Shown piece after piece: positions 7,507 through 28,400 of a DNA stretch of 64,000 nucleotides. The notes under the pieces were generated by a model. It was not told the DNA's origin. It did not search any database and worked only from the letters and a program-made list of their open reading frames with translations. Made by a program: the position numbers and the translations under genes. Origin of the DNA: Dimorphilus gyrociliatus (Eukaryota; Animalia; Annelida); NCBI GenBank assembly GCA_904063045.1, contig CAJFCJ010000019.1, positions 434,001-498,000 of the forward strand, given 5' to 3'. Positions within the stretch are counted from its first letter, which is position 1. Every line of letters starts with the position of its first letter.

Positions 7507-10392
7507 ATGATGGACGAAATAATAGACAAACCCTCTAGGGTCTATCAGTTTAAGAAACTACCGTATGGTATTCGCACAGGCAACAGTTTGAAATTAAAGA
7601 GATTCAAATATTTTCATAAGAGACATCAGGAGCGTGTCTTTAAGTGGGTCTTCTACGATAAATATACAAAGAAGGAAGCGGAGAATATTTTAAACGATTG
7701 CGATAAGGTTCTTGCGGATGGACTGCATTCTTTTGCTCAGAAGAAAGTTGCGCGTTATGGTCCCATTTCGTCGCCGTTGGCTTACTCGCTTAACAAAAGA
7801 AAGCGATGGAATTTACCTTATCATATCCAAAATATCGCTAAGAAAGATTCTCTAAGCGAAGAAACTTATAAAGTTTGCTATCTTGAGAGATTTTCAAATG
7901 TAGCAACTCTTCCAGGATATTACGGTTGTGGATGCACACTCGACCAGATTGCGTCGGTAAGAACTTTTTACAATGAGAATGGTGAAATAAAAAGACCTGG
8001 GAAGAAGTATGGATTCGAACTTGACATGATAAATGGTAGTAACAATCGCCCTAAACTTCAAGACTTCGTATTAAGGCAAATTGATAATGAAGAAAGCTAT
8101 TTCCAAGTTATTTACGACATTTGTAAAATACGTCCTATGGATTCTCTAGCGAAAGGAAATTTCGGATTCTATCCAATGGCATATTATGATAAAAAGATGA
8201 ATGCTCAAAAGCATAAAACGCCTGCAGGAAAAAGATTCGATAAATGTTTAGATTCTAATTATTACTTGAGGCGCTATATTGACGAGGGAATTATACACTT
8301 CAATAGTCTGAGCAACAAGATGGAAACGGAGGAGGAGGAAGAAACAAACACAATTCATCATTCTTCTAACATAGTCCTAGGAGATTTTATAACGAAGAAA
8401 AATATACGAAAGCGTAAGCAAAAACTATCAAAGAAGAGAAGTTATGTTAATTTTAAAGAGGAATCAAAGTCCAAAATCATTTATTTAGATCAAAATAACA
8501 TAAATACTAACAGCATTAGCTCGATAAGCGATTTTGATATAAAAGAGCATACGGAAGAGATCGAAGAAAGTACAAAATTGATAAACACAGAGGCTATTTT
8601 CGAATTTTATTTGCCTCTGAAATCCTATAAATCGTTTCTATTGGTTTGCTCCCAAAATAATATTCCTGTTCTAGATGCAGAAAGCTCTCCTCCTTACTTT
8701 TTATTGGACTTTTCCAAAATAGTTGAAAATATCTGCGCTTCAACAAGGCATTATACGAACAAGATCAAGCTAATCAGAGCTTTAGGTTTGATGACACCCT
8801 ATAGCGAAAACGATAAAGCTGTTATAAGTATGACGTTTTATTCGAATATCGAAAGCAGTCGGGCGTTAAAAAGTCTAAAAACTGATGCTAAAAATGTAAA
8901 CGATATGATTAAGATGATTAATCATCATGTTTCCGGTTGGTTGAATTCATCGAGGGATTTTATTCGAATTATCGATTTAACGGGAAGCAAGAGAGATGGA
9001 AATATAAGAGATAAGCCACATAAAACCAGAATAATAAGCGGTTGGATTCTAAATAACTTTGGATTTAGTCAAACATCTGCAGAAAAATTTGACATATTCC
9101 TTTCCTATTTAAAATCCTATTGGAATAACAAAAAGCCTGATATTAGCAATTTCTCGGGTGAATTAGAAAAGAAGAATGATTGGCAGATCACTTGCAAAAT
9201 TTGTATGATAGAAAAAGATACCCATTCTGGTTTGGCTATGAAATGCGGTCATTGGTTCTGTTTTGCCTGTTGGAAAAATTATTTGTTATATAATCGATCC
9301 CGTAACTTAAATTGCCCTACTTCAAAATGCCAGCAACAAATTGAACATCCTATTTGGTTAGCCGCAACGACTTTAAAAATATTCCAACACATAGAAAGAC
9401 TCACAGTTAGAAAGCTTATAGAACAAGAGAAAGTATGGATCCATTGTTCCAACTCAGCTTGTAATTTGTTGACAAACGTCAATAATAGTATTAAAATTCC
9501 CATAGTTGAATGCTCTTGCTCTAATCAATGGTGCACAGAATGTTTGGATGTTTTTCATTGGCCTGCAACGTGTAATCAAATAAGATATTTCAACGAGGTA
9601 ATAGATGATTCTGGTATTGAAAAAGATCGATTTATGAATGAGTACTACATTACTGAAATTAGAATATGCCCACATTGTAAAGAGAAGGTTGAAAGAGAAT
9701 CAATTATGTGTAATGAAATGCAGTGTATATGCGGTGGAAGATTTTGTTGGAATTGTCTTAAAAAGTTATACGAATGGGAAACTCACGATTCTAACGATTG
9801 TTCTAATGAAAATCGCGAAATATTCACCTTTATAGATGATGGATTTCTAAAAACTGATAAATTCGAATTCCTTCAAACAGTTTATAAATCGTTTAACGAT
9901 TTTAATACTTTAGACGTTTACCCCCAATCTAGATCAACTTTTAATGGATGGAAACGCACAATAGAACGTCAGCTGCCAACTGGAAAGGCAAATATTCGTA
10001 AAGAAATTGAGAATGAATTTTTAAGCATTTTACAAGACTGTCATTACTTATGTCATATAAGTGATTATATTGTAATGAATACTCTCGTATTAATTTACTT
10101 CTCTGGAAATGAAATCGCATGGAAAATGGTTTCTATAGAATTTCTTGAGAAACGACTCATTCTCGAAAAACTTCTATTACGTTCTATTTTAGCAACAAAG
10201 AGATTGAGAGAAAAATTAAATGGTACTAATTTTTCATTGCCCGAAAATTGGATAGCTCAAATAACATCTTTAAAGAATCAACTCGAAAGGTCTTTAATTA
10301 ATATCATCAACAATAAATCTATTCCTTACATTAGATGTATGGCATCGAAAATAACTTTAGATCGTAATATATGGTCTATTCTACCTACATAA
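7507..10392 (+). CDS. RBR E3 ubiquitin ligase, copy 1 (961 aa, intronless; unassigned N-terminal region, RING1-IBR-Rcat, helical C-terminus)
   Basis: Single ORF. RING1 CKIC..KCGHWFCFACW..CPTSKC; IBR CSNSAC..CSCSNQWCTECLDVFHWPATC; Rcat CPHC..MCNEMQCICGGRFCWNC. Confidence 0.9.
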   Translation: MMDEIIDKPSRVYQFKKLPYGIRTGNSLKLKRFKYFHKRHQERVFKWVFYDKYTKKEAENILNDCDKVLADGLHSFAQKKVARYGPISSPLAYSLNKRKRWNLPYHIQNIAKKDSLSEETYKVCYLERFSNVATLPGYYGCGCTLDQIASVRTFYNENGEIKRPGKKYGFELDMINGSNNRPKLQDFVLRQIDNEESYFQVIYDICKIRPMDSLAKGNFGFYPMAYYDKKMNAQKHKTPAGKRFDKCLDSNYYLRRYIDEGIIHFNSLSNKMETEEEEETNTIHHSSNIVLGDFITKKNIRKRKQKLSKKRSYVNFKEESKSKIIYLDQNNINTNSISSISDFDIKEHTEEIEESTKLINTEAIFEFYLPLKSYKSFLLVCSQNNIPVLDAESSPPYFLLDFSKIVENICASTRHYTNKIKLIRALGLMTPYSENDKAVISMTFYSNIESSRALKSLKTDAKNVNDMIKMINHHVSGWLNSSRDFIRIIDLTGSKRDGNIRDKPHKTRIISGWILNNFGFSQTSAEKFDIFLSYLKSYWNNKKPDISNFSGELEKKNDWQITCKICMIEKDTHSGLAMKCGHWFCFACWKNYLLYNRSRNLNCPTSKCQQQIEHPIWLAATTLKIFQHIERLTVRKLIEQEKVWIHCSNSACNLLTNVNNSIKIPIVECSCSNQWCTECLDVFHWPATCNQIRYFNEVIDDSGIEKDRFMNEYYITEIRICPHCKEKVERESIMCNEMQCICGGRFCWNCLKKLYEWETHDSNDCSNENREIFTFIDDGFLKTDKFEFLQTVYKSFNDFNTLDVYPQSRSTFNGWKRTIERQLPTGKANIRKEIENEFLSILQDCHYLCHISDYIVMNTLVLIYFSGNEIAWKMVSIEFLEKRLILEKLLLRSILATKRLREKLNGTNFSLPENWIAQITSLKNQLERSLINIINNKSIPYIRCMASKITLDRNIWSILPT

Positions 10393-10835
10393 CTTGATTT
10401 CACCCTCCTCTCTCCTTCACCACCTATCCTCTAGTCCTCCTTCCTTCTTTCTTATGCATACAGTTTATTATTTATTTTATTGTTTCATTGTTTACAGTTA
10501 TCTTTTTACAAGTATAACAAAGATACTGAATACATTAATAATATTTGATATTATGTTTAAACTTTTTTTTATATATGTAAATGAGCCACCTGTCAGCCAT
10601 GTTTTTTTTATAACTATTGTTTTTTTTATATATACTATGTAATAGAATACAGTTTCGGTTATGAAATTTTTACGTGTTTATCACATTTTGATTATAATAA
10701 ATTATTGTTTATATTATTATTATTATTTTATCTTTATTATCTTATTTTTATAAGAAATATTCAGGATATAGAATATCTTTGCTTATATTTAAAATATTTG
10801 TCAACGACTCCATTTTGTTTTCTTAGTTGCAGTTG

Positions 10836-10881
10836 GTTGTGCAATGTTTTGTTATGACTACTTGCACTAAGCTTGCGCAAC
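10836..10881 (+). promoter_or_regulatory. C/EBP-type sites upstream of RBR copy 2
   Basis: GTTGTGCAAT at 10836-10845 and CTTGCGCAAC at 10872-10881, 130-175 bp before the ATG at 11010. Confidence 0.5.
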
Positions 10882-11009
10882 AATTTTATATATAAAAATG
10901 TTAAGTAGAATGATGATCATTTGTATACCGCTTTTACCTCTAGGATTATTTTAGTTCATCAATTCTCTTTCGAAATCTAGTTTAAACATTTATCGAATAT
11001 ATTGAAAAT

Positions 11010-13652
11010 ATGGAGTTTGATGAACCAGTAACCGTAAAAAATTCAGTTTTATATCCAAATCGACTTTATTACAAAGACTTTCGTACGGGAAATAGAATTA
11101 ACTATAAAATACTCCGCAAATTTCAAAATTTATCGGATCATTTTGTGCAAAAAGAATTTTTATACGACGAGAGTCTTAATTTAAAAGAGGCTAAGCAATT
11201 GTTCGATAATAGAATTAGGGAGCTGGATGACGGAGGATTAGAAGCTGATCCCGAAAATTACTATATACCTTTTCTATATTCGACTAATAAACGAGGCCGG
11301 TGGCAAATTCAAGAAGATATTAATGCGGTAGGTAAAGCGAAATGGTTGAAAGGAGAAGATTACTCAATCTCATATAATGAACGACACATGGGAAATTTGA
11401 CTAGACCAAATGTCAAGCTACGTTGTAACAGAGATGGTATCGTCAAGAAGTCAAAAACGCTATCACGCCAAAGAGATTTAATGGATACAAATAAGCCAGA
11501 ATTGGATGAAGAATGTCCTGTTTCTATACAGTATTCCTTTTTTGCACCTGGTGTTATAACATCAAACTCAAAAAGTGGGTGTTCAAATGAGCTAACCGAC
11601 AAAGTTACTCTAACTCGCATGAGAAAAAGGAGAAACTGTTTTATTGAGAGAGAGAATCTTTCTACTGATTCTATTAGGCATATTTTTAGTCCACCCGACG
11701 AGATTGACTGCAAGAACCTAACTGACGATAAAGATACAGCTAGTCCTTCTAATTACTCACTCACCTTAAATGATTTCATAGTTGATCAGCAAAAGAACGA
11801 AAGAATTAAAAAGGGAAAACGATGTAAGAAAGGAAGAAAGCTCTCTTGGAAGAGTTTAGAAAAAAGTAGGCTAAAAGAAGAAGAAAAAGAAGAGATTGAA
11901 GAACTTGAAACATTTTTGGAGAGTAATTTAAATAAAGATAGCAGAGAAGAGATTACTTTTAAATTTATACTCCCAGCGAAATGTTATAAATCGTTTTTGA
12001 TTGACTGTTCCGAGGAAAATATTTATGTTCTAGATGCTGAAACTAATTCGCAGATGTTCTTGCTAGATTTTACGTATAAAATAAGAAACACTTTCCTAGA
12101 GTATGGCATGGATGAGAACGCCGTAAAAATGTTTCGATTTTTAGCACTAACCACCTTTCTTTGTGATAATGACAACATCATAATGAAAATGGTTTTATAT
12201 ACGAATATCAACTGCAATTCGACTTTAGCAAGCTTCGAAAATTTTAGCGAAAGCTTTAGTAGTGCAATTAATGAGGTTAATTATCATATTTTTTCATGGT
12301 TGCAAAGTTATTTACCTTTGAGAGAATTTTATGAAAAGACTGAATCGAAGAATAAGCAAAAAGGTGAAAAGGAATTGTTAAAATTGGTTCACGAAAGTGT
12401 GTTTGGCAATCAAATGTCTACAAACTACGAAGACGTGTGGTTAGGTAGTTTGAAGAATTATTGGGAAGAAAATAGACCAAAGCTCGAAGATCTTGATATT
12501 ACTTTATTAGAAGTTGACGACTGGAATATTCAATGCGATATTTGCATGGAACAATATGATACCTCCGAAGGTCTATCCCTAAAATGTAAACATTGGTTTT
12601 GCATTCATTGTTGGAAAGAACATTTGTCTATATTCAATTTCAATTGTCCCACTTGCCCAATGGTCAATTGTAAAGTTCAGGCTAGCCTTCCAGTGTATTT
12701 GGCTATTCTGAACTTTGATAGATTTATTACAATGGAAAAGAGAATAATTGAGAAAACAATTAAAAATGAAGCTTGGGTCTACTGCAAAAAGCCAAAATGT
12801 CAAAAACTAACTAAAATGCAAGGCATACAAAGTTCAACCGTTTTTTGTTCATGCTCAGAAAAATGGTGCAAACTTTGCGGTTTGGATGAGCATTGGCCTT
12901 CGTCTTGCAATCAATATCAATATTTTTTACAATTTCAGCAAAAGATTAAAAACCCGAGAAATGCTAATTTTGATGAATTAATTTTGATTGTCTCTGTCAG
13001 AAAATGTCCATTCTGTGGAGTTCTGATTGAAAAATTTGACGGCTGTAATGAGATGCTTTGTCTTTGTAAAAATTCATTTTGTTGGAAATGTTTATCTCCG
13101 TGGAGGCAATGCGTAAAAGGATGTAAGCAAAAGGAAAAGGAAAGTCAAGATATAATATTCACAAATGAAAAGTGTATAAAAACACTTCAATATAGACAGG
13201 CAATAAGGGAGGAGAAAATGTATCCCAAATTGAAGATGATATATTCACAAGTCGAGAAATATACAAGGCAAATGAATATTCCATTAAACGATTTCACCGA
13301 GGAAAATGTAACAGAAACTCTTGTCAACTCGACTTTTTTGTGCAAGCTAACCTCTTCATTGTTAAAAAATTGCGCCATCTATACGGGAACCTTAATTAGA
13401 GAGGATCTTCCATCAGAAATCTTAAGAAAATTGTCTAATCTACAAGAGTTACTTAATCGAGCTGAAACGTTCGAAATGAAATTACATAATTTAATTGAAC
13501 TAAACAATAGAATGGTGTTTAGAAAGTCCCGGCTCGAAAATGTTATTAAGACCCGAGAATCTTTAGATAAATTAGTAAAAGAAATAGTCTTCTCTTCCCG
13601 AGAATTACAAGGAAAAATGCAAATTTATAAACAAGATACAGCTGTTATCTGA
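11010..13652 (+). CDS. RBR E3 ubiquitin ligase, copy 2 (880 aa, intronless)
   Basis: Single ORF. RING1 CDIC..KCKHWFCIHCW..CPMVNC; IBR CKKPKC..CSCSEKWCKLCGLDEHWPSSC; Rcat CPFC..DGCNEMLCLCKNSFCWKC. N-terminal blocks shared with copy 1 (RTGN, NKR.RW, F.F.LP, FLLDF). Confidence 0.9.
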   Translation: MEFDEPVTVKNSVLYPNRLYYKDFRTGNRINYKILRKFQNLSDHFVQKEFLYDESLNLKEAKQLFDNRIRELDDGGLEADPENYYIPFLYSTNKRGRWQIQEDINAVGKAKWLKGEDYSISYNERHMGNLTRPNVKLRCNRDGIVKKSKTLSRQRDLMDTNKPELDEECPVSIQYSFFAPGVITSNSKSGCSNELTDKVTLTRMRKRRNCFIERENLSTDSIRHIFSPPDEIDCKNLTDDKDTASPSNYSLTLNDFIVDQQKNERIKKGKRCKKGRKLSWKSLEKSRLKEEEKEEIEELETFLESNLNKDSREEITFKFILPAKCYKSFLIDCSEENIYVLDAETNSQMFLLDFTYKIRNTFLEYGMDENAVKMFRFLALTTFLCDNDNIIMKMVLYTNINCNSTLASFENFSESFSSAINEVNYHIFSWLQSYLPLREFYEKTESKNKQKGEKELLKLVHESVFGNQMSTNYEDVWLGSLKNYWEENRPKLEDLDITLLEVDDWNIQCDICMEQYDTSEGLSLKCKHWFCIHCWKEHLSIFNFNCPTCPMVNCKVQASLPVYLAILNFDRFITMEKRIIEKTIKNEAWVYCKKPKCQKLTKMQGIQSSTVFCSCSEKWCKLCGLDEHWPSSCNQYQYFLQFQQKIKNPRNANFDELILIVSVRKCPFCGVLIEKFDGCNEMLCLCKNSFCWKCLSPWRQCVKGCKQKEKESQDIIFTNEKCIKTLQYRQAIREEKMYPKLKMIYSQVEKYTRQMNIPLNDFTEENVTETLVNSTFLCKLTSSLLKNCAIYTGTLIREDLPSEILRKLSNLQELLNRAETFEMKLHNLIELNNRMVFRKSRLENVIKTRESLDKLVKEIVFSSRELQGKMQIYKQDTAVI

Positions 13653-14089
13653 TATTATTCATCAAGAAAAAAATATACAATATACTGTCTACACTATATC
13701 AAATTTTTCGTATGGAAATAATAACAGAAATATAGTATATTATTGATGTTATGCGTAAATAAAGTAGATTGTATAGTTAAAAGAAAAAACAAGAGAGGTT
13801 TAACGTAGCCTTTTTATTCTCTCTCTCTTTATTCTTCTCTTATAAATGAATGAAACGGGATAGAAAATTTAGAGAAATATTTATTTAACTGATGAGGGAA
13901 TGGACTAAAATAAACTATGATTTTCTTTTCCCCTTCAAAAGAGAAAAGAATGTTACTGTTATTTTTTTGCTATACAATATTAATCACTATTTTCTTTCTT
14001 TCTTTTTCTAAGTTATTAAAGCTAATCGGACTCTTCATCTTCAGCCTAGAAAAGAGATAATTGTATGCATAGATTAATCAAATAAGATA

Positions 14090-15109
14090 TTACATAATGT
14101 TTAGATGACTTACATTGACGATAAGAGGAGTTGTTTGTTGATTGAACCGTTCTAAATGAGGTATTATGGCTGTCCAAAGTTTATCCTCCCTAATTTTAAA
14201 CCCTTTCGGTGAACATCCTAAAGGACCAACAGTTTTTGAACACATAAGAATCGACAAAAGGATAAATGATATAAAATGATACATCAAGTTAAATTGTACA
14301 GAATTAGCATCCATTAAATGATAGCGAACTAGATTCCAACCACCATACCAGAACGTTAAAGTACAAATTGCACCTAACGAGGCTATTGATTGACGTAATA
14401 TGAATTGATAAACATTATTTGATCTTTCGTAAACGTTACAGAGTTTATATTGAATAAGATGTATAAATATGGCTAGAATATAGCCAAATAATGTAAATAG
14501 TCCATAAACAATTAGTTTATTTGACTTATTGAAGGTGTAATTTAGAATATTCCAAACTGAACGCCATATTTGAATTGCTGGTGTTGTGACTATAAACAAA
14601 GTAGCAAGAGAATCCAATGGAAATGTTAAATAATATTTTGACCAGGGTTGAGTATTAAATAAAGTATGAACTTGAAATACTGTTTGTAAATCATCAACTT
14701 CTATGAGTACTGGAGTGAAGTGAGATGCGTGAAGGCTTCGTAGGATAATTAGTAAGATAAATGATACTATCATCAAGATTATACTGGAAATTAGTCCTTT
14801 TCCAATAACTTCATCCCCAAACCACCAAATTCCTTTCCATAGTATTACAGTTGAACAGGCTGTGAAATATATTAGAAAACAACTGGCGATACGCCTACTA
14901 AATATGTTTGTCGGAAGTAAACCACTCTCAACTAACGGTGTTGCAATGTAACAACAAAACATAAAAGCATAACTCGCGTATAATAATAAATACGGTTTAA
15001 TATTGTAAAAACTACAAAATAATTCAACTAATCTAAATGATCCAGCCCAGAAGAATACACTTAAAATTGAAACAAGTGTCAGAGAAATTATTCTTAAAGA
15101 CCTTGACAT
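14090..15109 (-). CDS. Intronless polytopic membrane protein (~8 TM), Fuseless-family-like
   Basis: 339-aa ATG-started ORF made of four repeated hydrophobic units, each with a W-x-G/S-x-W/F motif (FWAGSF, LWKGIW, IWRSVW, FWYGGW). This is the pattern I recall for Drosophila Fuseless; the family call is from memory. Confidence 0.6.
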   Translation of the reverse strand: MSRSLRIISLTLVSILSVFFWAGSFRLVELFCSFYNIKPYLLLYASYAFMFCCYIATPLVESGLLPTNIFSRRIASCFLIYFTACSTVILWKGIWWFGDEVIGKGLISSIILMIVSFILLIILRSLHASHFTPVLIEVDDLQTVFQVHTLFNTQPWSKYYLTFPLDSLATLFIVTTPAIQIWRSVWNILNYTFNKSNKLIVYGLFTLFGYILAIFIHLIQYKLCNVYERSNNVYQFILRQSIASLGAICTLTFWYGGWNLVRYHLMDANSVQFNLMYHFISFILLSILMCSKTVGPLGCSPKGFKIREDKLWTAIIPHLERFNQQTTPLIVNVSHLNIM

Positions 15110-15690
15110 TTCTTTACTATCCTCCAGATGTCGTTAGCTCATCGTCGATAATTATGTATTCCCTGTACATTTTCTTAAATAAGATTAATCTCGATTTTAA
15201 AGATGATTTTAAAGAGACTTTTACTTTGATAATTTATTGTTCGTTGTAAATGGCTTACTTTCGTATAAATGCCATTAATTTTCATTCTAACCCAACTGGG
15301 AAAAAGAGAAAAGGGGTACAAAGGTCTTCAAAGGCAAAAAACAGAAGAGAGGGAGAGGTCGTCTTCTACTAATAAATTAAAGTAGGAAGAATTCAGTATT
15401 TCTTTATGAAAAAGATTTCTAAAGAATAAGTCGATAGACGGATATTCCTTTACATTAGTAAATCATTCTTAGATCGAAAAGCTTTTAGACAAGAAAACAA
15501 ATGAACATTTCAAGGAATACAGAATTTTAAAGATAAAATACTTTTTACTATATCCGTCTTTTTACGCTAAAAGCATTGATAAACACTTGGTTCACTTAAA
15601 AAATAGGGTAATGTTTAAACACATATTTAAAATTTTCAACTTATCCAGTTTTACCCGTTTTCGTTCTGAGCTTGAATATTTTCCTTTTTT

Positions 15691-15772
15691 GTTATGCAAT
15701 ATTCAAAAATAGAAATATATTGACCAATAAGAATCGTCAATAAATATCTATAACTTTACGGAGTTGTGCAAT
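15691..15772 (+). promoter_or_regulatory. C/EBP-type sites and CCAAT upstream of RBR copy 3
   Basis: GTTATGCAAT 15691-15700, CCAAT 15724-15728, GTTGTGCAAT 15763-15772. Confidence 0.5.
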
Positions 15773-15827
15773 CTATTAATATAAAATAGAAGTTCAATGT
15801 TATGTAAATATTTTTCATAATTTAAGA

Positions 15828-18302
15828 ATGAGCACAATGTTGTCCGATGAACGGCGGGAAGGAAATTCTTTAAATCTCACAACTACAGTTTTAACAGAAA
15901 CGAATTCAAATTGTCAGGAAGTTAATAATGAGGAAAATGATAAACATCTTATAAGATTGTGTATCTATTCATTGTATGCAATTTACGTATGGACTATCGT
16001 CGTAAGGTCTGTTCAATTAGGTTTAAGAGATGTTGAACAAAGATTATTTGTGAAAGTATCAAATAAAAGGTCTAAGAAACGACATTTGAATTTGCGTAAA
16101 ACAATTAAAGAGTATTCTCATGAAAATCAATTCAAAAATCGCTCAAACTTTCATATAAACTCGCAAGATTATTGTCAATTCAATGATAATAGCTATGATG
16201 ACATTTTTCATCAACCTCTTCCCGAGAAGTTTTCAAAGTTTCGTCAGAGGAAACGGGAGAAAAAATATTGCAAGAGAGACAGAGATGATCTTTCATATTC
16301 TACTGAACAACAAAGATCTTTAACTAAAGAACATAAACGAGCTATCTGTAAACAATCTTTTAAAGATCTAGACTCTTTTTTATATTATCTAGATGACCTT
16401 CTCACAATGTTGAAGTTAAAGAACAGGAAGAAAATGATGTCAACGATGACACTTCTGATCAAGTTCGTCATGTCAGCTATTTAAGTGATTTCATTCAAGA
16501 AAATCATACCAGAAAGAAATCATGTGATAAGTATCGAAAGAGAATTTCTATCCTACCTATTAAACCGATTCGATGGGTTATACACCTAGCAGAGAATCTA
16601 CCAACAGTTATAAAGAACACTGATGAAAAGCTATTAAACAATTACACTTCTATAAACTTTGAATTTTTTCTGCCGTTCAATTGTTCATTTTCCCTTGCCG
16701 ATTGCGACATAGAAGATATTCCTATCATTGATGGTCAGAGTACGCCTCCTCTCCATCTTCTAGACTTTTCATCTTATATACGTACTATTCTTCTAGCCAG
16801 AGGAGATCTCTCAAGACGCAAGGATCTGGCTAGAGCTCTTATTTTTATGAAATATCAAAGATGTGAAGAGGTAGTAAATATTAAAATGAATTTTGCCCCG
16901 AATATTGCCTCAAGCAATAGTCCATCTACTATAAAGCCTTTTCATGTAGTAAACTTTAAAGAACTCATCGATATAGTAAAGCAAACGATAAATGACTGGC
17001 TAAAGAAGGCAATCCTAATAAATGTATTAGATATTTGTGATTTACAAACAGGCTGCAACAGAGTTCAAGTAGAGATAAAGTTGGGTGATTTGGTTAATGA
17101 AAACTTAGGAATATCTCCTAATTTTGTTTTAAAAGAAAAGATATATTACTTAAGTATACTGGAATACTGGAATAGAAATAAAATAGACTTGAACGATGTA
17201 AATATAATGATGGTGTCGAAAAATAACCGTATTTGTAATAGTAGTAATATCAGAAGTGTTGTATGTAATATTTGCTACATGAAGAAAGATAACAATGAGA
17301 TTATAGCATTAAAATGTAATCATGAATTTTGCATAGCCTGCTGGAAGAGCCATCTGAGAATATCCAATTCTGATATGTGCCCAGAATATAATTGTGTGGA
17401 GTACGTTAGTCTACCTGTGTATTTTTCACTGATGGATCTCAAATTATCAATTAAACGTGAAAGAGAGGTTGTAAATAAAATCAGTAGCAAACTTTGGTAT
17501 TCTTGTTGGAAGGATAATTGCCAATATATGATAAAAAAGAATGAAATGATAAATTCTTTAATGATTGAATGTTTATGTTCGGATAATTGTTGTTTCGATT
17601 GCGGTAAATCATATCATTGGCCAGCTTCTTGTAATCAACAAACCATATTCGAATCATACATTTTTATCGATGTATTACGAAATTCAATTCAATCTCTAAG
17701 GCTTGTTTGTCAAGTTAAAACTTGTCCAAATTGTAAACGTATGTTTGAAAAGATGGGAGGCTGTGATTCAATGAGTTGTATCTGTGGAATAGCATTTTGT
17801 TGGAAATGGTCAAAGGAAATAAAAGGAAATCATCATAGAATTTGTTTATCTGTTGTTAAGCCTGAAGAATTTATCTTCGAAAAGATACGGCTTGTTTCGG
17901 AGTCCTATTACATTGCTGTTGCCTTGACAAAGTCTCTAAAAAATCTCACCTACAAATCTCAAGAATAGATTAAAACTTCGACAAAATGATCAAAGGCAAA
18001 TTTATGATGAAAAATTAAAAACTAGTATTAAGAAGGAATTACCGTATAGAGAGCTTATTTTAAGAAACATAGCAATTTTCCTAGGAATATGCAACTTGAA
18101 TATTAAGTTACCAAATGATATTTTAATTGATATTAATGACCTAAAAAAACAACTACAATTAACTTACAATTTATATCTGTCTTTGAAACGTGAACTATTC
18201 ATTCAAAGAGAAAAGATCTTCTATCAATCAATGAAAAGATTGAAATACTTTGAAGAAAAATTTAATATTGAATTTAAAAGGACAATTCAGTTATCTTCTT
18301 AA
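15828..18302 (+). pseudogene. RBR E3 ligase copy 3, broken by two frameshifts (or assembly indels)
   Basis: Frame changes near 16395-16405; the RBR-homologous frame is open from 16397 (..SYLSDFIQ..NFEFFLP..) through RING1-IBR-Rcat to TAG at 17966-17968. Homology to the copy 4 C-terminus (YRELILRNIAIFLG vs YKELFLIKNMAIFLG) resumes in another frame from ~17940-17965 to 18302. Rcat reads FCWKW rather than FCWxC. Confidence 0.75.
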
Positions 18303-18974
18303 TTAAAATATAATAAACAATTCGAATTTCAATTATAAAAAATTACTCTTTTTTCTATTTCAAGTATTAATAATCCAATAATTAATCCTATAAAGAATAG
18401 CGTAGGCTCAAATATTCAAATAGGCTGAGGTTATGTAATCATTCATTCGTTCGTTTGTTTAATTATATATGCTATAGGCCTATAAATTGGCGAATAATTC
18501 TGAGCAATAAATTCTTAAAAATCAGCATTATTTTTTAAAAATGCAAACTAAAATATATTTAATAATTCTGTTAATTGCTCTATAGACTAAGAATTCCCTT
18601 GGTATTTGATTCGTTTGTAGAGTTTAGATAGTTATCTCGCATTTGAAGAAAAACAAACAAAGTCATAAGCAAAGGACGTATTTAACAATGATAATTGTTT
18701 TTTTTTTTGTAACAATTAGCAGACTTTCAGCGTTATTGATAATATAAGTTTAACATATAACAAAAATGGAGGATCATTTCAAAAAAGAACAATTCCATAA
18801 TTTATTTCTATTATCGCTCTTTTTTTATTACTAGGAAAGTGTTTACAATATTCGAGATGGTAAACAAATATTAAAAAGAATTTCTTTAAGAACTTATTAC
18901 CTTTTGCTATTAAGTGGATTAAACTAATAAGTTTAATAAATTTAATAAAATGATATTGTTTATTATTAAGTTGA

Positions 18975-19042
18975 ATTGTGCAATAGCCGGTTCAGCCAAT
19001 CAGAAATATCTTAGGCTTACATTTTTCGCAAGCTTATGCAAT
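18975..19042 (+). promoter_or_regulatory. C/EBP-type site + CCAAT box module upstream of RBR copy 4
   Basis: ATTGTGCAAT (18975-18984), 9-nt spacer, AGCCAATCA (18994-19002); CTTATGCAAT at 19033-19042. Confidence 0.6.
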
Positions 19043-19143
19043 TCGTTTTGAAAGCCTTTCTCGACGTATATAACACGGCTAGAATAAACCAACTCATTTC
19101 ATTTCAATTAGAGTATCATAGGAAGAAGATAGATAGTATCATC

Positions 19144-21849
19144 ATGTTCGAAGATCAAATTGAAGAGAAACCATCGAAGAAATATAACAAAAAGTGCATT
19201 AGTAATAAGTATCTAACTGGGCACAGTGTTAAACATGGCAATATTAGTAAGAAGAATCGCGATCGTCTTTTCAGCTGGATTTCTGATAAAAATGGATTCA
19301 TTGATAAAGACATCAACTCTTTTATTGAATCAGATTGTATTCCTACAAACAATGTAGAAAAACAGACGCATGTAGCAAAGAGTCGTTTGCATTTTGTGAA
19401 AAATCAAGATGACCAGAAGCAATACGCTCTGGAACTTTCGTTAAACAAAAGGAATCGTTGGAATACAGTTCAACAAACTGAATACAGTGAATCTGCTGAA
19501 AGATTAGATTATATAAGCGAAAATAATTATTCTATACTTCTACTACGCCAGACTCAACAAAAATTAATAAAGAAGAATATTGCAGAAGGTCAAACTTTCT
19601 ACGATAAAAATGGAAAAGTTCGAAAGAATATAAACGGAAAGCGTATTCGTTCAAAAATCATATCTGAAAGTAAAGAAATCAAAAAGCCTAATAACGAATT
19701 AGATATTGATAATACCGAAATTATGTTTGAAGTTTATCGATGTAAATCGGCATGTTCAAGGAAACGAAGGCATGAAACTTTCAAGTTAAAAGAAAAAGTC
19801 GGAAATAGAGTTAAACTTGAAACTTATACTCAACACTTTAAAAATGAGGTCTTAAGTAAAGCTGATTTTCAATATTCTTATGATGATGATGATGATGATG
19901 AATTTGAAGAATACGATGATTGTGAATACTCAAATGAAGCTCCTGCAAAAATCTGTCTGGCTGATTTCTTTTCAAGACCACGTTTAAAAGAAAAATCGAG
20001 AAATTCATCACAAGCAAGCTTGGAATCTCAAAATACTGCTAGTTCTCGTAAAGGACAAACAGTTGTTCTCAATGAAAACTATACATATAATTATAAAAAT
20101 CAAAAATATGATAGTCTTCCCCCTGAAAACCCTATAACTGCAAACTTTGAATTTTCTCTACCTACTAGTTGTTCACTCTCCTTTGCTGATTGTGATCTAG
20201 AAGATATTCCTATCATTGAAAGTCAAAGTACACCTCCTCTCTTTCTTCTAGACGTTTCATCTCAGATACGAACTATTCTTCTAGCCAGGGGAGATCTTTC
20301 GAGGCGAAAGAATCTGGTTAGGGCTCTTATCCTTATGAAATATCAAAGAAATGAAGATGCACTAAATGTTACAATGACTTTTACTGCCAACATTACTACA
20401 AGCAATAGACTCCCTCCTACAAAGAGCTTTAGTGTATCCAATTTCAAGGATATCGTTTACAACTTAAAACAAACGATAAATGACTGGTTAAAGGATGCAA
20501 TTCTAATAGATATATTAGATCTTTGCAATTTATTCTCCACGAAGGAGATAAAAATGAACAAAAATGGAACGATAAGTGATTTAATTCACGAACATCTAGG
20601 AATGACTCATAAAATTCGATCAAGAGAAGATACGTTCTACCAAAATTTGGAGGAGTATTGGATTGAGAATAAAACAAACGTAGAAATGGCGCATTTAAAA
20701 ACTACAATGGACGATAACACAAACCTCGTTTGTAATATTTGCTTCATTGAAATTGATAAAGGAAATAGTTTAGCATTAAAATGTAACCATTACTTCTGCA
20801 TTCAGTGCTGGGAAAGTCACCTAAAGTTTAAATTTATTGCCACCTGTCCTCAGTTTCAGTGTGATGAACCAGTTAAACTGCCTGTATACTACGCTTTATT
20901 CGGTTATTTGTTAACTTATCGAGTAGAGTCTAAAAGGGTCTCTGAAAGGAATATGGGTCAATGGTTAGCTTGCAAGAATTTTCAATGTAACTTAATGCTA
21001 AAAATGGAAAATATGGACAAACTACCTATGTGTGAATGCTTATGCAGTAAACATTGGTGTTTAGATTGCGATGATAACTTTCACTGGCCATCTGCGTGTG
21101 AACAACAAAAATTATACGATCAATTACGCAACCCTGGTAAAGGATCATCAAATGCACTGGGACAAGTAGTTGTTCGTGTTAAATCATGTCCCTATTGCAG
21201 ACGCAAATTTGAAAAGAATGGAGGTTGTAATTCAATGATGTGCCACTGCGGAGCTAATTTTTGTTGGGCTTGCGCTAAGCCAATGAAAAATCATATCAAT
21301 TGTAAACTTTTGGAGGAAGAGAAGTTCGTATTACGAGATTACCAATATTTCAACATGAGGATGATCAATCTTGCCGAGACTTGTTCTAGTACTTTGGAAT
21401 CTCTCAGAAACTCTTCAGAAAATCATGAAAAGTTGTTTCTCTTCTATAAAGATCAATTCAGCTGGTTAAATGAGCGTGAAAATAAGCGTTTCTTTATTAA
21501 CTTAGTGCAAAAAGTCAAATTTCAATGCTATAAAGAACTATTTCTCATTAAGAATATGGCCATCTTTCTTGGAGCTTTTGATGCAAGGGTGAAAATACCA
21601 AAAGATTTATCTGAGAAATTAACCCAATCAAGAAAATTTCTTAGTTCAGTATATTACCGAATCAAACTGCTAAAAAATTCAGTAGTTGGCAGTAAACGCC
21701 ACAAACCTCAACTATCTTTAAAAAATATTGAAAAATTTTCAATGAGATCTAGTAAAGATATGAAGGAGCTCGTTAAAATATGCCACGAGATAAAAGAAGG
21801 GAACTTTCAAAAATATATCTTAGATTCATTACACCATTTAAACTTGTAA
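19144..21849 (+). CDS. RBR E3 ubiquitin ligase, copy 4 (~901 aa, intronless)
   Basis: ORF is open from 19036, but ATG 19144 (MFEDQIEEKPS) aligns with copy 1 MMDEIIDKPS and is the likelier start. RING1 CNIC..KCNHYFCIQCW..CPQFQC; IBR CKNFQC..CLCSKHWCLDCDDNFHWPSAC; Rcat CPYC..GGCNSMMCHCGANFCWAC. Confidence 0.9.
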   Translation: MFEDQIEEKPSKKYNKKCISNKYLTGHSVKHGNISKKNRDRLFSWISDKNGFIDKDINSFIESDCIPTNNVEKQTHVAKSRLHFVKNQDDQKQYALELSLNKRNRWNTVQQTEYSESAERLDYISENNYSILLLRQTQQKLIKKNIAEGQTFYDKNGKVRKNINGKRIRSKIISESKEIKKPNNELDIDNTEIMFEVYRCKSACSRKRRHETFKLKEKVGNRVKLETYTQHFKNEVLSKADFQYSYDDDDDDEFEEYDDCEYSNEAPAKICLADFFSRPRLKEKSRNSSQASLESQNTASSRKGQTVVLNENYTYNYKNQKYDSLPPENPITANFEFSLPTSCSLSFADCDLEDIPIIESQSTPPLFLLDVSSQIRTILLARGDLSRRKNLVRALILMKYQRNEDALNVTMTFTANITTSNRLPPTKSFSVSNFKDIVYNLKQTINDWLKDAILIDILDLCNLFSTKEIKMNKNGTISDLIHEHLGMTHKIRSREDTFYQNLEEYWIENKTNVEMAHLKTTMDDNTNLVCNICFIEIDKGNSLALKCNHYFCIQCWESHLKFKFIATCPQFQCDEPVKLPVYYALFGYLLTYRVESKRVSERNMGQWLACKNFQCNLMLKMENMDKLPMCECLCSKHWCLDCDDNFHWPSACEQQKLYDQLRNPGKGSSNALGQVVVRVKSCPYCRRKFEKNGGCNSMMCHCGANFCWACAKPMKNHINCKLLEEEKFVLRDYQYFNMRMINLAETCSSTLESLRNSSENHEKLFLFYKDQFSWLNERENKRFFINLVQKVKFQCYKELFLIKNMAIFLGAFDARVKIPKDLSEKLTQSRKFLSSVYYRIKLLKNSVVGSKRHKPQLSLKNIEKFSMRSSKDMKELVKICHEIKEGNFQKYILDSLHHLNL

Positions 21850-22621: not shown

Positions 22622-24876
22622 TCAATCCACAGGTTCATTTTGTGGAAATTTTTTATCACTATTCTGTTGAGTCCTTTCAAATCTTTCTAACCTTCTCTTT
22701 CGTAATTCATTTTCCTGGGTATCCTCAGCTCTTGAGGAATCTGCAGTTACTTCTTCAGAAACAGCGGTATACCCAACAGCACCTTCTGTTTTCGAGGAAA
22801 AAAATTGAATTAGCTTGCATACGCTCTATAGTTTGCAATCAATTTCTACTAAAAGATCATACCTAGTTGTTCGTCGGTTGTTTTACTTTGTGAGGAGGGA
22901 GATGTAGCTGTTTCCCTATTCTCTTCCTTTGTAGTACTAGTTTCCGGTTGTGGGTCTTTATTGGTGTAGGCACTCCAGTCAATATTAGCAGTTATTGAAC
23001 TATATTGATGAAAATGAGTCATAGCAGCATCAAGAAGAGTTCGAATATTTCTCAAGCACATTATTCTTGCTTCTACAGCTCGTCTCTCATTTCCTTCCAA
23101 ACTTCTTAGCTGCTCCTCGGTCATTTGAGCCAGCTGCTCTGGCATTATAGGAGCAACGGGTGGTGGAGGAAACGACGGCATACCGAGTGTGAAAAAGGGC
23201 ATAAAAGATCCCGGAGGAGGTGGAGGAGGCGGGTTAACACCCATAGGTGGTAGAGTAAATGGTACTCTGGGAGCTGATGAAGTATTAACACTAGTTGTGG
23301 GTGTTGGGGTAGTTGAAGAACTATCGGTTGCTAGAATAGTGAGAAGACGACGTGAAGTAAAAAAGCTCCTTTTCTTTTAAAAAAAATTAAACTTACTAGT
23401 TGTTTGTGCTGATTGATTCGGTTGTCGTGGAACTTGTGGTGGTGGAATAGGCCAAAAATTGGGCATTTGAGCAGGTGCGGGAGCAGGCTGAGGTGCTGGT
23501 GCCGGCTGTGGGGGTGGAGGAACTCTATTTGCTTGAGACGTTTCAGACTGAAGCACATCTAATCGACAGATAGGACATGATTGTTGACGTTGGAACCAAG
23601 AGCGAAGACAAGATGTGTGAAAAATATGCCGACATGGTAGTTTTTTACAGGAGCCCACAGCCATATCTTCTCGGCAAATTATGCAAACATTATCGGTTGC
23701 CTGAAGTTCTTCAGCAGTCGCATTAGGATACAGAGTATTCATATTTCTAATTGCTCTTCGAGATTTAATCACGTCATTCAATGACTTTTTGAATGATCTC
23801 ATAGTTAAATACAAAGGCCTTATTGCAAAAAGAGGGAACGTTAGAACCTTAATCATGATACTAAAGAACAAAACGTAGAGAACGACTTTGATGAAGCCGA
23901 GAACAAGTTCACCATATAATAAGTAAACGGCTTTATTCTCCCATGGATTTTCCGATTGTAAATCAATAGCATGTAGGACGTATTTCATAAGGACAGTAGC
24001 AGTCACAGTTAACAAGATAGCATACTAAAAAAAAGATAATTGAAAATTCAATCTATGTCTATTGTTAATTTTAAGAAAAAAAATTTACTTCAAATCCGAA
24101 CACCAGTTGAACAGATGCTCCTTTTATTAATATGCTTTGGTAAGCATGATTGATCAAAAATAAATCCAAGCTGCTTAGTAGAACTATAAAAGCTATGTGA
24201 AAAATATAAAAGAAAATATATAATTTTTATAAATAATGTATAAATGATGTATCTTTTTTTATAAATTGATAAGTTACCTATAGCTCGTATATGAAATAAG
24301 ATTGATATCGCAGGACTCCTTTCCATCTGTAAAGTATGATTGGCGTTAAAACAAATAGTAATTTTTTATTAGGTCTACTTACATAGTCAATTCTATCTTC
24401 TGATAGCCAATGGAATCCTTTCAAAAATAGAAGGAGAGTGAACATTGCTACAAATTTTGGACTAAAGTCATCTCGGAATACTGTGAAGGCTAAGCAAGTT
24501 TCTGTCACGGCGTACCAAGATTTTTCAATAAGATGCTAGAATGTGAAAATATTAGTAAAAAAAATTTTTTTGAAATATATAAAATCAAACAAACTTCAAC
24601 TTCTGCTGCTCTTAATTGACCAAAAAATATCTTTTTTAAAAGCTTACCAAATAATACAACGAAAACAAAAGCTTGGGCGTATAATACCTGTAAAAAAGAA
24701 TTAGATCTGTAAATGAACCAGATTATCGCTCATATTTATAAACTTACCGCCATACTAGGGTTAGATTTTGTCAAATAGACTACAGAAGGGTAGAATTGAT
24801 TTTTCTGATAAAAAGCATTGAAAATAACTCCAGCCGTTAAGGCGAAACTACTCAATGTTACTAGTACTGCTTTCAT
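22622..24876 (-). CDS. SYVN1: Synoviolin / HRD1 ERAD E3 ubiquitin ligase (multi-exon)
   Basis: ATG 24876: MKAVLVTLSSFALTAGVIFNAFYQKNQFYPSVVYLTKSNPSMA; TETCLAFTVFRDDF; RING-H2 CIICREDM..CKKLPCRHIFHTSCLRSWFQRQQSCPICR; Pro-rich region; EQLRSLEGNERRAVEARIMCLRNI; final exon ELRKRRLERF..VD* with stop at 22624-22622. Confidence 0.95.
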
Positions 24877-25454: not shown

Positions 25455-28400
25455 CTATAAACAGCCGGAGTACGTGGAACTGCTTCCTTTTCTGGAATCG
25501 CACGGAATTCCTCTGAATTCGTTGATATCTGTGCTTTTTCTTCGCATATTCTCCGATAATCGGTTTATTCTTATTTGACTCGATCTTCTTGAGGATAGAA
25601 GGCAGGTGGCTGGAATGTTGTTAGAATTTCGACGGGAACCAACAGAGTTGCCCGATGTTGGTATATGACCGTGAGCTGTTGCTCGCACTCTCTGATAGCG
25701 ATCCTTACAAATTCCACATTTTGCTAATGTTGCCAACAAGTCTTTTTTAAATTGCGATGTTAACAATGCGTAAATGAGCGGATTAGCACAGGCGTTTAAA
25801 GGGAAAAAAGTCACTACAACGACTTTGCTCTGGCTAACATCTACGAGAGGATAGCCTGCGGCTGCAGTTAAACCCAGAAAGGCAACAGGAACAACGCATA
25901 CAAGATCCGTAAGGACCAGCGGTGCCATTCTCTTAGCAACTTTTGCATCTACCGGACTTCCACTTGCTTGTCCTCCTCTCGCACGACGAAATATATCAAT
26001 ATAAGCAGTAGCTGCGTAAAAAATGATACAAGAGAGATAATTATAATTTATAATACTTGTTTTTCAACAATAGACCCTTAATTAAGATATTTTTTACTAT
26101 ATACTTGTATATAGTATACTATAGTATACATAGTACATAAATGACTAATACTTTAACGTGTGGATAGCAATAAATATGTTGATATTGAGATTAGAATAAG
26201 AAGAAATAGTAATACCGATTATGATAAAACCAATAATTTGAAGAAGTAGGAGGATAAAGACGTAGATTTGCGCCTGCGAATTAGATACGTCCATTGGCAG
26301 ACAAACAGATGTCTTACCGTACGTGCTAACGCCTGACAAGGGTAGCGTTGCTATAGAGACGCTATATATCCAAGCCAATAGCATAGCGATAGCGGCTCTC
26401 TTTAATGAAATTCTTTTCGTTAATCTCACCGCGTAAGCAATAGTGTACCATCTCTCAATTGTAAGTAAAACCAGAGCTGAGGTTGAAACATTCGCCGCTA
26501 GAACGGCTAAAAATCCTGCAGCTTGACAACCTGGACCATCTTGCCATCTAATTGCATAATTGAAATAAACACCTCTAGTGCTATGGTCAATACTAGCTAA
26601 ACATAACAAATATATCCCTAAGCTTAAATCAGCAATTGATAGATGAGAGATGAGAAATTTGGAAACTCTTAAACCTGTTTTCAGTGTACAGATATTAACT
26701 ATCAGTACTACACTATTACCAATCACAGCTAACAGGATAGCAAACCAAACGACTACTCTTAACCACTCAGAACCAAGAACACCTTCACAGGGATTAAATG
26801 CATCTGGCGCCGGTGTACAAGAAACATTCTGTAGGAATTTAATGATTTCTCCCGAACCGCATATTGTTGATTGATTAATAATATGGGTACTCGGTAGAGG
26901 CATAACATCCCATCCACCTTTTGAAGTTTCTTTCTTTAAATTTGCTTCTACACATTTGTTATTAAATTCTCTATCAAATTTCGACCAATCCCAAAGTGGA
27001 TATTGTAATTTTGGCTTTTTAAATGCGCAGCAATGGTAGGAATAAGTAAGCTTTGTCACTTTCAATTTAGGAAATTTTCCAACGGGCGGAAATTTTTTTA
27101 AAGTTGATACATTTTCCAAATTCAAGTACTCAAGATGGCCTAAACCACTTGTTGGCAATTTTACAATTGATGTTGACGATAAATCCCTAACAAATGTTTT
27201 AAATAGCAAACAGTTAATACAACTAGTACTTTCTCCTATTAGATTAAGATACAGAATATATGTAATATATAATATCACGATAATTATTAATTTTACTTAC
27301 AATTTTATCAATCCTTTTACATTTTGAAATGCTAAATCATGTAAAAAATTCAATCTTGGATTACCATTAAGATTTCTGCCAAAAGAATACAAAGAATAGA
27401 ATTAAGATATACATAAATTTTAATATGACCTTGTTTAGTACCCCCTTTTTACTTTATATATAATATATACATAGTATGTTTTATACTGTTTGCACTGTAA
27501 ATTTTCTATTTAGCATCATTCAGAGTACTCTAATTAAATTGTTTTTATCACCTTGAACTTCCTTTATTTGTTATTTTTAAATAATCTAAAAACATTGTTT
27601 ATTGAAAAGATACAAAATAATAATGACTTACAGCTTGGATAATTCTATAGAAGAGAATGCATCTTTTTCAATTCTTTCTAACGACGATTTCGTAATGCAT
27701 CTATAATGAAGAGAGAAAGAAAGAAAGAGGGAGAGAGAGAGAGAGAGAGAGAGAGAAAAGATGTAATAACAATAAAATGTAATATAGTTTATTATGTTTC
27801 TCTTACAATTCTCCGATGACAGTAGTTTGGTTTAATGTTGATCTAAAACTATCTGATTTCAACACTCGTATCGGATTACCACTAAAGTCTCTATAAGAAA
27901 ACATAAAGGGGAAAAGATTAATAAATAAGGAAAAGAAAAAAGAAACAATTTCTTTTTACTTACAACTTTATTGGTGTTTTCGTAGAAAACGTAGAAAAAT
28001 CTGGTAGTTTAGTCAAATTACAATACTTTATTTTTCTATTAATCAAGAAAATTAAATTAAAAGTACATGTCCTTTTTCAGTTTTTCGTTTTTTTATCTAC
28101 ATTAAGTAGCCTTACAGTGTCGTTAGATTCCTTAGTGATGTCATTATATCTGAGCATTCTGTTAGCATTTTACTATTCTCGATAAGTCTTTGAAAACAAA
28201 AAAGTAAAGCAAAAAGTCATATTTAGTTTTTTGTTTTAAAAAAGAAGAAAACAATGGAAATAAGCAAACTTACATTGTTTTCAAAACGCTTACTTGACCC
28301 AAATTAAAAGATCCTTTATGAATTTTCTTTAACTTTTCATTGCGTGTCAAAACTCTGTTTGTTTGTAAATATATTTATAAAGAGAGAGAGAGAGAGAGCA

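What the first reader, a model, noticed from the sequence alone, without database searches (positions are those of the whole stretch)
7507..21849. Tandem array of four intronless ~900-aa RBR E3 ligases with a shared unassigned N-terminal/central domain
Seen in sequence: four same-strand paralogues with RING1-IBR-Rcat and a helical tail, all intronless in an intron-rich neighbourhood. About 550 aa upstream of RING1 carry ordered conserved blocks: S.NKR.RW, Y.I/V, an acidic patch then L.DF(I/F), a basic patch, F.F.LP, I.(V/I).(D/E)...(PP).FLLD.S/T, (V/I)..WL and L..YW..N. Established: animal RBR families (Ariadne, Parkin, HOIP/HOIL, RNF14, RNF19, RNF144/217, RNF216, ANKIB1, CUL9) have other N-termini, and I recognise none of them here. 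Inference: a lineage-specific, rapidly diverging RBR family whose N-terminal domain may recognise substrates, for example in stress or pathogen defence. The F.LP...PP.F.L block loosely recalls an RWD fold, which is speculative.
Basis: partly seen in the sequence, partly recalled or inferred. Interest (0 to 1): 0.85.

Follow-up and report, generated by a model that had tools for sequence, protein, structure and literature searches.

The report
Ariadne-like ubiquitin ligase cluster, novel N-terminus
This stretch of the tiny annelid Dimorphilus gyrociliatus carries three intact genes and one decaying gene for fast-evolving Ariadne-type RBR ubiquitin ligases, whose long front half holds two folded modules that match no described domain and that also occur in scallops.

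Summary
Copies A (7507-10392), B (11010-13652) and D (19036/19144-21849) are uninterrupted ORFs of 880-961 aa, with complete RING1, IBR and Rcat zinc ligands and the catalytic cysteine. Copy C (15828-18302) is split over three reading frames and is decaying. A Fuseless gene on the opposite strand interrupts the array.

A family profile hits human ARIH1 at E 6.7e-47, then ARIH2 and CUL9, so the catalytic half is Ariadne-type. The conserved blocks before RING1 are real. A profile built from them alone found only proteins of this family among 1.84 billion representatives. These include other Dimorphilus loci, a related annelid (one gene is a syntenic orthologue of B), scallops and unnamed environmental eukaryotes. 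The family is therefore not lineage-specific.

No member has the histidine two residues after the catalytic cysteine. The genes evolve fast: B is 33% identical to its orthologue, against 62% for the neighbouring gene.

Verdict: a new variant of a known kind, of moderate interest.

The parts
7507..10392 (+). Copy A: intact 961-aa ORF. N1 motif SLNKRKRW at 7786-7809, LxDF at 8377-8391, basic patch at 8389-8442, FxFxLP (start of N2) at 8599-8616, RING1 from 9193, Rcat active site C-N-E-M-Q-C at 9709-9726, then a helical tail.
11010..13652 (+). Copy B: intact 880-aa ORF, used for the structure models. It has a syntenic orthologue next to Fuseless in a second annelid (P0005, locus L001).
11127..11549 (+). 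N1 module of copy B (aa 40-180). The predicted order is beta-alpha-alpha-beta-beta-beta-beta, with pLDDT about 77-93. It contains the invariant K94/R97/W98.
11952..12329 (+). N2 core of copy B (aa 315-440). An alpha/beta sandwich with pLDDT mostly 80-95. The FxFxLP and FLLD blocks are strands.
12528..13124 (+). RING1-IBR-Rcat of copy B (aa 507-705). The catalytic cysteine lies in C-N-E-M-L-C at 13044-13061.
13125..13652 (+). Helical C-terminal tail of copy B, in the position of the Ariadne domain. Homology to that domain is not shown by the tail alone.
14090..15109 (-). Fuseless-family gene (339-aa single ORF) that interrupts the array. It serves as a synteny anchor and a rate yardstick.
15828..18302 (+). 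Copy C: a decaying copy in three frames (15828-16484 frame 3, 16397-17968 frame 2, about 18003-18302 frame 3). The public model DgyrCDS11381 (587 aa) bridges the first break with a GT..AG interval of about 69 nt at 16347-16415. It also skips about 288 nt that encode the IBR. It stops at 17968, so it lacks the tail.
19036..21849 (+). Copy D: intact ORF of 937 aa from the first ATG. The annotated start at 19144 gives 901 aa and fits the family alignment better. Rcat active site C-N-S-M-M-C at 21226-21243.
16661..16930 (+). Probable gene-conversion tract between C and D (partner in D at 20149-20418). Nucleotide identity is 80-87% and third-position identity 67-80% here, against 27-60% third-position identity elsewhere in the pair.

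Best explanation
The locus is an old, compact cluster of genes from an uncharacterised, fast-evolving subfamily of Ariadne-type RBR E3 ubiquitin ligases. It holds three working members (A, B, D) and one decaying member (C).

Likely mechanism, inferred from the family chemistry:
1. RING1 docks a UBE2L3-type E2 carrying ubiquitin.
2. Ubiquitin passes to the Rcat cysteine as a thioester, and then to a target.
3. The helical tail probably covers Rcat, as the Ariadne domain does in ARIH1/ARIH2.

The family-specific front half is the targeting or regulatory part. It consists of module N1, a charged linker (acidic patch, L-x-D-F, basic patch), and module N2, followed by a UBA-like-region remnant before RING1.

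No member has the histidine two residues after the catalytic cysteine. I therefore predict a long-lived E3~ubiquitin intermediate, or discharge that needs a partner or a different acceptor.

Shown here: the architecture, the Ariadne-type core, the folded state of N1 and N2, the taxonomic spread, the rate of divergence and the decay of C. Inferred: catalysis, autoinhibition and the role of N1/N2.
For: - Intact ORFs with all eight RING1 ligands, all eight IBR ligands and the Rcat ligands plus the catalytic Cys.
- The family profile matches ARIH1 at 6.7e-47 over ARIH1 residues 126-500. GGCN-x-M aligns on the ARIH1 active site GGCNHM.
- The ESM Atlas finds Ariadne/ARIH2 clusters nearest, with structural TM 0.55-0.60 over B residues 500-870 to Ariadne-sized RBRs.
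- The pre-RING1 profile finds only family members, all with an RBR or fragments of such genes, in Dimorphilus, a second annelid, scallops and unnamed eukaryotes.
- AlphaFold models: N2 mean pLDDT 76 (core above 80), N1 core 77-93.
- N1, the N2 core and the RBR are the best-kept parts between orthologues.
- C/D dN/dS is 0.33-0.36 in the N2 core and RBR.
- The HHARI H359A mutant traps the E3~Ub intermediate (PMC5462532). The His is absent in all family rows.
Against: - Pfam Ariadne (PF19422) does not hit any tail, and a tail-only profile finds no ARIH chain. The autoinhibitory role of the tail therefore rests on position, on the long ARIH1 alignment, and on a low-confidence Atlas model.
- I obtained no RNA evidence.
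- No reference RBR phylogeny could be built, so placement relative to RNF14 and ANKIB1 is untested.
- N2 of annelids and scallops aligns only at noise level (12%).
Confidence: 0.72

Rival explanations
1. The genes are divergent members of the RNF14/ARA54-type (RWD plus RBR) lineage. N2 is an RWD domain that docks on a GCN1-like partner or on the ribosome.
Confidence: 0.15
2. The genes are ordinary ARIH1/ARIH2 co-orthologues that multiplied in this lineage, like the ARI-1 expansion in Caenorhabditis. Their long N-terminus is only a stretched, fast-drifting version of the acidic N-terminus and UBA-like domain.
For: ARIH1 is the best match, and the alignment begins inside the UBA-like region. Lineage-specific Ariadne expansion is documented in Caenorhabditis (PMC6288150).
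Against: N1 and N2 are confidently folded and are conserved between annelids (N1 also in scallops, with invariant K, R and W). They have no counterpart in the ARIH1 or ARIH2 chains in the PDB. Members lack the Cys+2 His that ARIH1 has.
Confidence: 0.1
3. The array is non-functional DNA: retrocopies or pseudogenes that happen to keep open frames.
For: All copies lack introns. Copy C is visibly decaying. No RNA run was found.
Against: Three ORFs of 2.6-2.9 kb in DNA of about 31% G+C cannot stay open by chance. Every zinc ligand and the catalytic Cys are kept. Orthologues in a second annelid are also intact ORFs. dN/dS is below 0.4 in the folded parts.
Confidence: 0.03

Closest known systems
ARIH1 / HHARI (Ariadne-1), with ARIH2 / TRIAD1
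   Same: RING1-IBR-Rcat with the same ligand pattern and the G-G-C-N-x-M active-site loop. It is the best profile match (E 6.7e-47 for ARIH1, 2.7e-37 for ARIH2). A helical region follows Rcat. The stretch before RING1 aligns to the end of the ARIH1 UBA-like region.
   Different: About 450 extra N-terminal residues hold two folded modules (N1, N2) and a charged linker. No His lies two residues after the catalytic Cys. Pfam Ariadne and a tail-only profile do not recognise the tail. Divergence is very fast.
RNF14 / ARA54 (RWD domain plus RBR)
   Same: A small alpha/beta module sits upstream of an RBR. N2 gives weak structural matches to RWD domains.
   Different: No sequence match to RWD. The structural match is not above noise. 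The RBR core is nearest to Ariadne. RNF14 has no N1 and no long helical tail (the last point is from my own knowledge).
FANCL (E2-like fold, double RWD, RING)
   Different: FANCL has a plain RING, not an RBR. There is no sequence similarity, and the match is weak.
Caenorhabditis ARI-1 family expansion (PMC6288150)
   Same: Lineage-level multiplication of Ariadne-type ligase genes.
   Different: According to that paper's abstract, the expansion is recent and within one genus. Here the three lineages in the array predate the split of two annelid species, and they carry new N-terminal domains.

Membership tests
RBR E3 ubiquitin ligases | RING1 with eight C3HC4 zinc ligands | tested here: met
   Invariant C563, C566, C580, H582, C585, C588, C603 and C608 (copy A numbering) across 11 family members. 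Pfam zf-C3HC4 hits.
RBR E3 ubiquitin ligases | IBR domain between the two RING-like domains | tested here: met
   Pfam IBR at E 1.5e-8 to 4e-8 in A, B and C. D has no Pfam hit on this stretch: its IBR-family hits (PF01485 4.3e-4, below cut-off, and IBR_1/IBR_2) fall on the Rcat at 713-756. Its IBR rests on the invariant ligands instead: C647, C652, C669, C671, C676, C679, H684 and C689 (A numbering).
RBR E3 ubiquitin ligases | Rcat (RING2) with a catalytic cysteine | tested here: met
   Met in A, B and D: C735, C679 and C731, aligned on ARIH1 C357. Copy C keeps this Cys but has lost a zinc ligand (FCWKW). The P0010/P0012 lineage lacks Rcat altogether.
RBR E3 ubiquitin ligases | Forms an E3~ubiquitin thioester | not testable with these tools
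   Needs a biochemical assay.
Ariadne subfamily (ARIH1, ARIH2, ANKIB1, CUL9) | RBR core closest to Ariadne proteins | tested here: met
   Among solved chains: ARIH1 6.7e-47, ARIH2 2.7e-37, CUL9 4e-24, parkin 4e-12. The nearest ESM Atlas clusters are Ariadne/ARIH2. RNF14 and ANKIB1 references were not available.
Ariadne subfamily (ARIH1, ARIH2, ANKIB1, CUL9) | C-terminal Ariadne domain (PF19422) packing on Rcat | tested here: inconclusive
   The long ARIH1 alignment runs to residue 500, and the Atlas TM is 0.55-0.60 over B residues 500-870. But PF19422 is not hit even at E 10, and a tail-only profile finds no ARIH chain.
Ariadne subfamily (ARIH1, ARIH2, ANKIB1, CUL9) | UBA-like domain before RING1 | tested here: inconclusive
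   The profile alignment starts at ARIH1 residue 126, inside the UBA-like region. The model shows three helices there at low to middling confidence.
Ariadne subfamily (ARIH1, ARIH2, ANKIB1, CUL9) | His two residues after the catalytic Cys (HHARI H359) | tested here: not met
   The residue is E in A and B, S in C and D, and D, N, Y, F, Q or S in other members. In HHARI, H359A traps the thioester (PMC5462532).
Ariadne subfamily (ARIH1, ARIH2, ANKIB1, CUL9) | Activation by neddylated cullin-RING ligases | not testable with these tools
   Needs biochemistry.
RNF14 / ARA54 subfamily | N-terminal RWD domain | tested here: inconclusive
RNF14 / ARA54 subfamily | RBR core groups with RNF14 | not tested
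   No RNF14 sequence was returned by any tool, and the last word-indexed search returned only the query.

The most novel reading that the evidence does not exclude
N1 and N2 are new protein folds, or new uses of old ones. They define a spiralian-wide RBR subfamily whose catalytic loop has dropped the general-base histidine. These ligases would then hold ubiquitin as a long-lived thioester and release it only on a partner or on a non-lysine acceptor chosen by N1/N2. This could happen in a fast-evolving conflict setting such as immunity or the germline.
Probability: 0.2. Interest if true: 0.65.

Novelty: new variant of a known kind. Interest (0 to 1): 0.45.

Why it matters
RBR ligases are few, and each subfamily is defined by what sits outside the RBR core. 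A subfamily with two unassigned folded modules and a changed active-site loop, present in annelids and bivalves, adds a new architecture to that list.

It also offers a natural experiment on the role of the Cys+2 histidine. The compact, intronless genes of a small-genome laboratory annelid are easy to clone and express.

It is not a new kind of enzyme. No function in stress or defence is shown.

Tried and rejected
- Word-indexed protein searches with copy D, with the scallop N-terminus and with the B RBR+tail returned only self, one paralogue or scallop relatives. They gave no named reference RBRs, so no subfamily phylogeny could be built.
- Pfam on the N-terminal regions of 19 members and the N2 regions of 17 members gave only scattered single-member chance hits.
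- PDB profile searches: N1+linker gave one chance hit (RavO, E 0.02) and N2 gave none.
- hhalign of N1 against N2 showed no relation, so they are not a duplicated domain.
- N1 model: Foldseek against the PDB and the viral library, the ESM Atlas shape search, and two VIA-align runs found nothing. In the VIA runs a long linker helix (model residues 270-316) filled the lists, so the N1 core was poorly tested. The Atlas feature search on N1 gave no usable hit.
- N2 model against the Atlas: TM 0.45 or less.
- Atlas search on A residues 340-560: only weak ferredoxin-like matches, from a poor model.
- RNA evidence: no run on record as RNA holds the locus.
- Paper searches for the run accessions and the gene ids found nothing relevant.
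- The species behind SRR23372216/28/29, DRR639838 and SRR13325274 could not be named.

Full report
**Source and layout.** The window comes from Dimorphilus gyrociliatus. One of the encoded proteins is the public entry DgyrCDS11381, on the same 3.79-Mb contig. On the plus strand there are three long ORFs: A at 7507-10392 (961 aa), B at 11010-13652 (880 aa) and D at 19036-21849 (937 aa). The annotated start of D, at 19144, gives 901 aa and fits the family alignment better.

tblastn with A, B and D finds a fourth copy, C, at about 15.8-18.3 kb and no other copy in the window. Between B and C, on the minus strand, lies a single-ORF Fuseless gene at 14090-15109 (PF15993, E 4.8e-32). The array is therefore interrupted. 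Downstream of D comes one exon of a synoviolin-like gene, whose ORF starts at position 179 of the 268-position Pfam model, and then a GPCR. The neighbourhood does contain split genes.

**Copy C is broken.**
- Its N-part reads in frame 3 (15828-16484), the N2-to-Rcat part in frame 2 (16397-17968) and the tail in frame 3 again (about 18003-18302).
- The public model (587 aa) bridges the first break with a GT..AG interval of about 69 nt at 16347-16415. That length is close to the species' median intron of 66 bp (PMC7854359).
- The same model skips about 288 in-frame nucleotides that encode the IBR, and it stops at 17968, leaving the tail out.
- I found no GT..AG interval that would rejoin the tail.
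- C has also lost the invariant Trp of the N1 motif and one zinc cysteine of Rcat (FCWKW).
- A contig from a 2017 run of another study covers 15850-18141 with no difference, so the breaks are not private assembly errors.
- C and D are sisters. Their dN/dS is 0.33-0.36 in the N2 core and RBR.
- A tract at C 16661-16930 / D 20149-20418 is 80-87% identical in DNA, with 67-80% identity at third positions. Third-position identity elsewhere is 27-60%. This looks like gene conversion.

**The catalytic half.** Pfam finds RING and IBR-type domains in all copies. All eight RING1 ligands, all eight IBR ligands, the Rcat ligands and the catalytic cysteine are invariant across the family.

A profile of eleven family members matches these solved chains:

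| Chain | E-value |
|---|---|
| ARIH1 | 6.7e-47 |
| ARIH2 | 2.7e-37 |
| CUL9 | 4e-24 |
| parkin | 4e-12 |

The ARIH1 alignment covers residues 126-500. That span runs from the end of the UBA-like region, through RING1, IBR and Rcat, into the Ariadne domain. The ESM Atlas places the B RBR+tail nearest to Ariadne/ARIH2 clusters. Its own (low-confidence) model superposes on Ariadne-sized RBRs with TM 0.55-0.60 over residues 500-870.

The tail alone is not recognised. Pfam Ariadne is absent even at E 10, and a tail-only profile finds no ARIH chain. I therefore call the core Ariadne-type and the tail Ariadne-like by position only.

One active-site difference is family-wide. The residue two after the catalytic Cys is His in ARIH1 (GGCNHM). 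Here it is E in A and B, S in C and D, and never His in any other member. In HHARI the H359A mutant lets the E3~Ub intermediate be trapped (PMC5462532). The natural prediction is slow or partner-dependent discharge.

**The front half.** A profile of the four pre-RING1 regions was searched against 1.84 billion representative proteins. It found 17 proteins, all from this family:
- the four window copies;
- three more Dimorphilus loci: P0007 (967 aa), P0008 with P0011, and P0010 (775 aa);
- five proteins from Logan assemblies;
- Pecten maximus XP_033746085 (979 aa, 'uncharacterized');
- short fragments carrying the motif E-Y-S-L-N-K-x-K-R-W.

A second search added four more scallop proteins. Two contigs of unnamed eukaryotes carry N1 followed by RBR pieces with gaps; in one, N1 and RING1 lie 7.4 kb apart, so introns exist elsewhere in the family.

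Across 19 sequences K94, R97 and W98 (B numbering) are invariant, and G27, Y90 and S91 nearly so. No Pfam family and no PDB sequence matches N1, the linker or N2.

**Structure models.**
- N2 (B aa 305-508) has mean pLDDT 76, and the core at model residues 10-135 is mostly 80-95. The order is strand, two short helices, two strands, an inserted helix, three strands and then long helices.
- Foldseek finds nothing better than E 0.03 for N2.
- N1 (model of B aa 1-316) has a confident core at aa 40-180 (pLDDT 77-93) with the order beta-alpha-alpha-beta-beta-beta-beta. The region between about 185 and 275 is low-confidence, and a long helix follows.
- No library gave a match for N1. In both VIA runs the long helix filled the lists, so the N1 core is not properly tested.
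- N1 and N2 are unrelated by hhalign.

**Evolution.** The annelid sequences fall into five well-supported lineages: A; P0007+P0009; P0010+P0012; B+P0005+P0008; and P0006+(C,D). The scallops and P0017 lie outside.

P0005 sits next to Fuseless in the second annelid, as B does here. Fuseless is 62% identical between the two species, but B and P0005 are only 33% identical. The C/D-lineage gene of that species lies in a different neighbourhood.

Between orthologues, N1 (35-44%), the N2 core (31-36%) and the RBR (37-58%) are usually the best kept. The exception is the Rcat-less P0010/P0012 pair, whose tail is its best-kept part (59%). The linker (23-27%), the pre-RING stretch (18-29%) and the tails of the other two orthologue pairs (22-38%) drift faster. 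N2 of annelids and scallops aligns only at noise level.

The cluster is therefore old, its members evolve fast under purifying selection on the folded parts, and the family is at least annelid-plus-bivalve wide. Lineage-level expansion of Ariadne ligases has a precedent in Caenorhabditis (PMC6288150).

**Reading.** These are Ariadne-type RBR ligases with a new N-terminal architecture, listed in public databases only as uncharacterised proteins. The mechanism I commit to:
1. E2~Ub docks on RING1.
2. A thioester forms on the Rcat cysteine.
3. The tail masks Rcat.
4. N1 and N2 choose or sense the partner.
5. Discharge is altered because the Cys+2 histidine is missing.

A role in stress or pathogen defence is not supported by any result here. 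No RNA run holding the locus was found, so expression is untested.

Noticed in passing
window 16661-16930 and 20149-20418: This block between copies C and D is 80-87% identical in DNA, with high third-position identity, inside an otherwise 40-60% identical pair. It is a probable gene-conversion tract covering the N2 core.
   Followed up: partly
window 14090-15109 (-): An intronless Fuseless-family gene sits between copies B and C. It keeps the same position and orientation next to the B orthologue in a second annelid (L001 10602-11618).
   Followed up: partly
P0010 (DgyrCDS13222, another Dimorphilus contig) and P0012 (Logan): This sister lineage of the family keeps N1, N2, RING1, IBR and the tail but has lost the whole Rcat domain. 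It is conserved as an orthologue pair at 36% identity. It may be a catalytically dead paralogue.
   Followed up: no
window 17408-17695: The public gene model for copy C splices out about 288 in-frame nucleotides that encode the IBR, using GT..AG-like ends. Whether transcripts support this is unknown.
   Followed up: no
window 19036-19143: The first 36 codons of the longest D ORF have no counterpart in other family members. The annotated start at 19144 is the likelier one.
   Followed up: partly
window 22849-24015 (-) and 26145-27278 (-): Downstream neighbours are a synoviolin/HRD1-like RING ligase exon (TPR_SYVN1_N plus RING-H2) and a rhodopsin-family GPCR.
   Followed up: no
P0008 and P0011 (78-kb Dimorphilus contig): Two adjacent public gene models (152 aa with N1; 542 aa with N2, RING1 and IBR) look like one family member split by annotation. 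The 542-aa model lacks Rcat.
   Followed up: no
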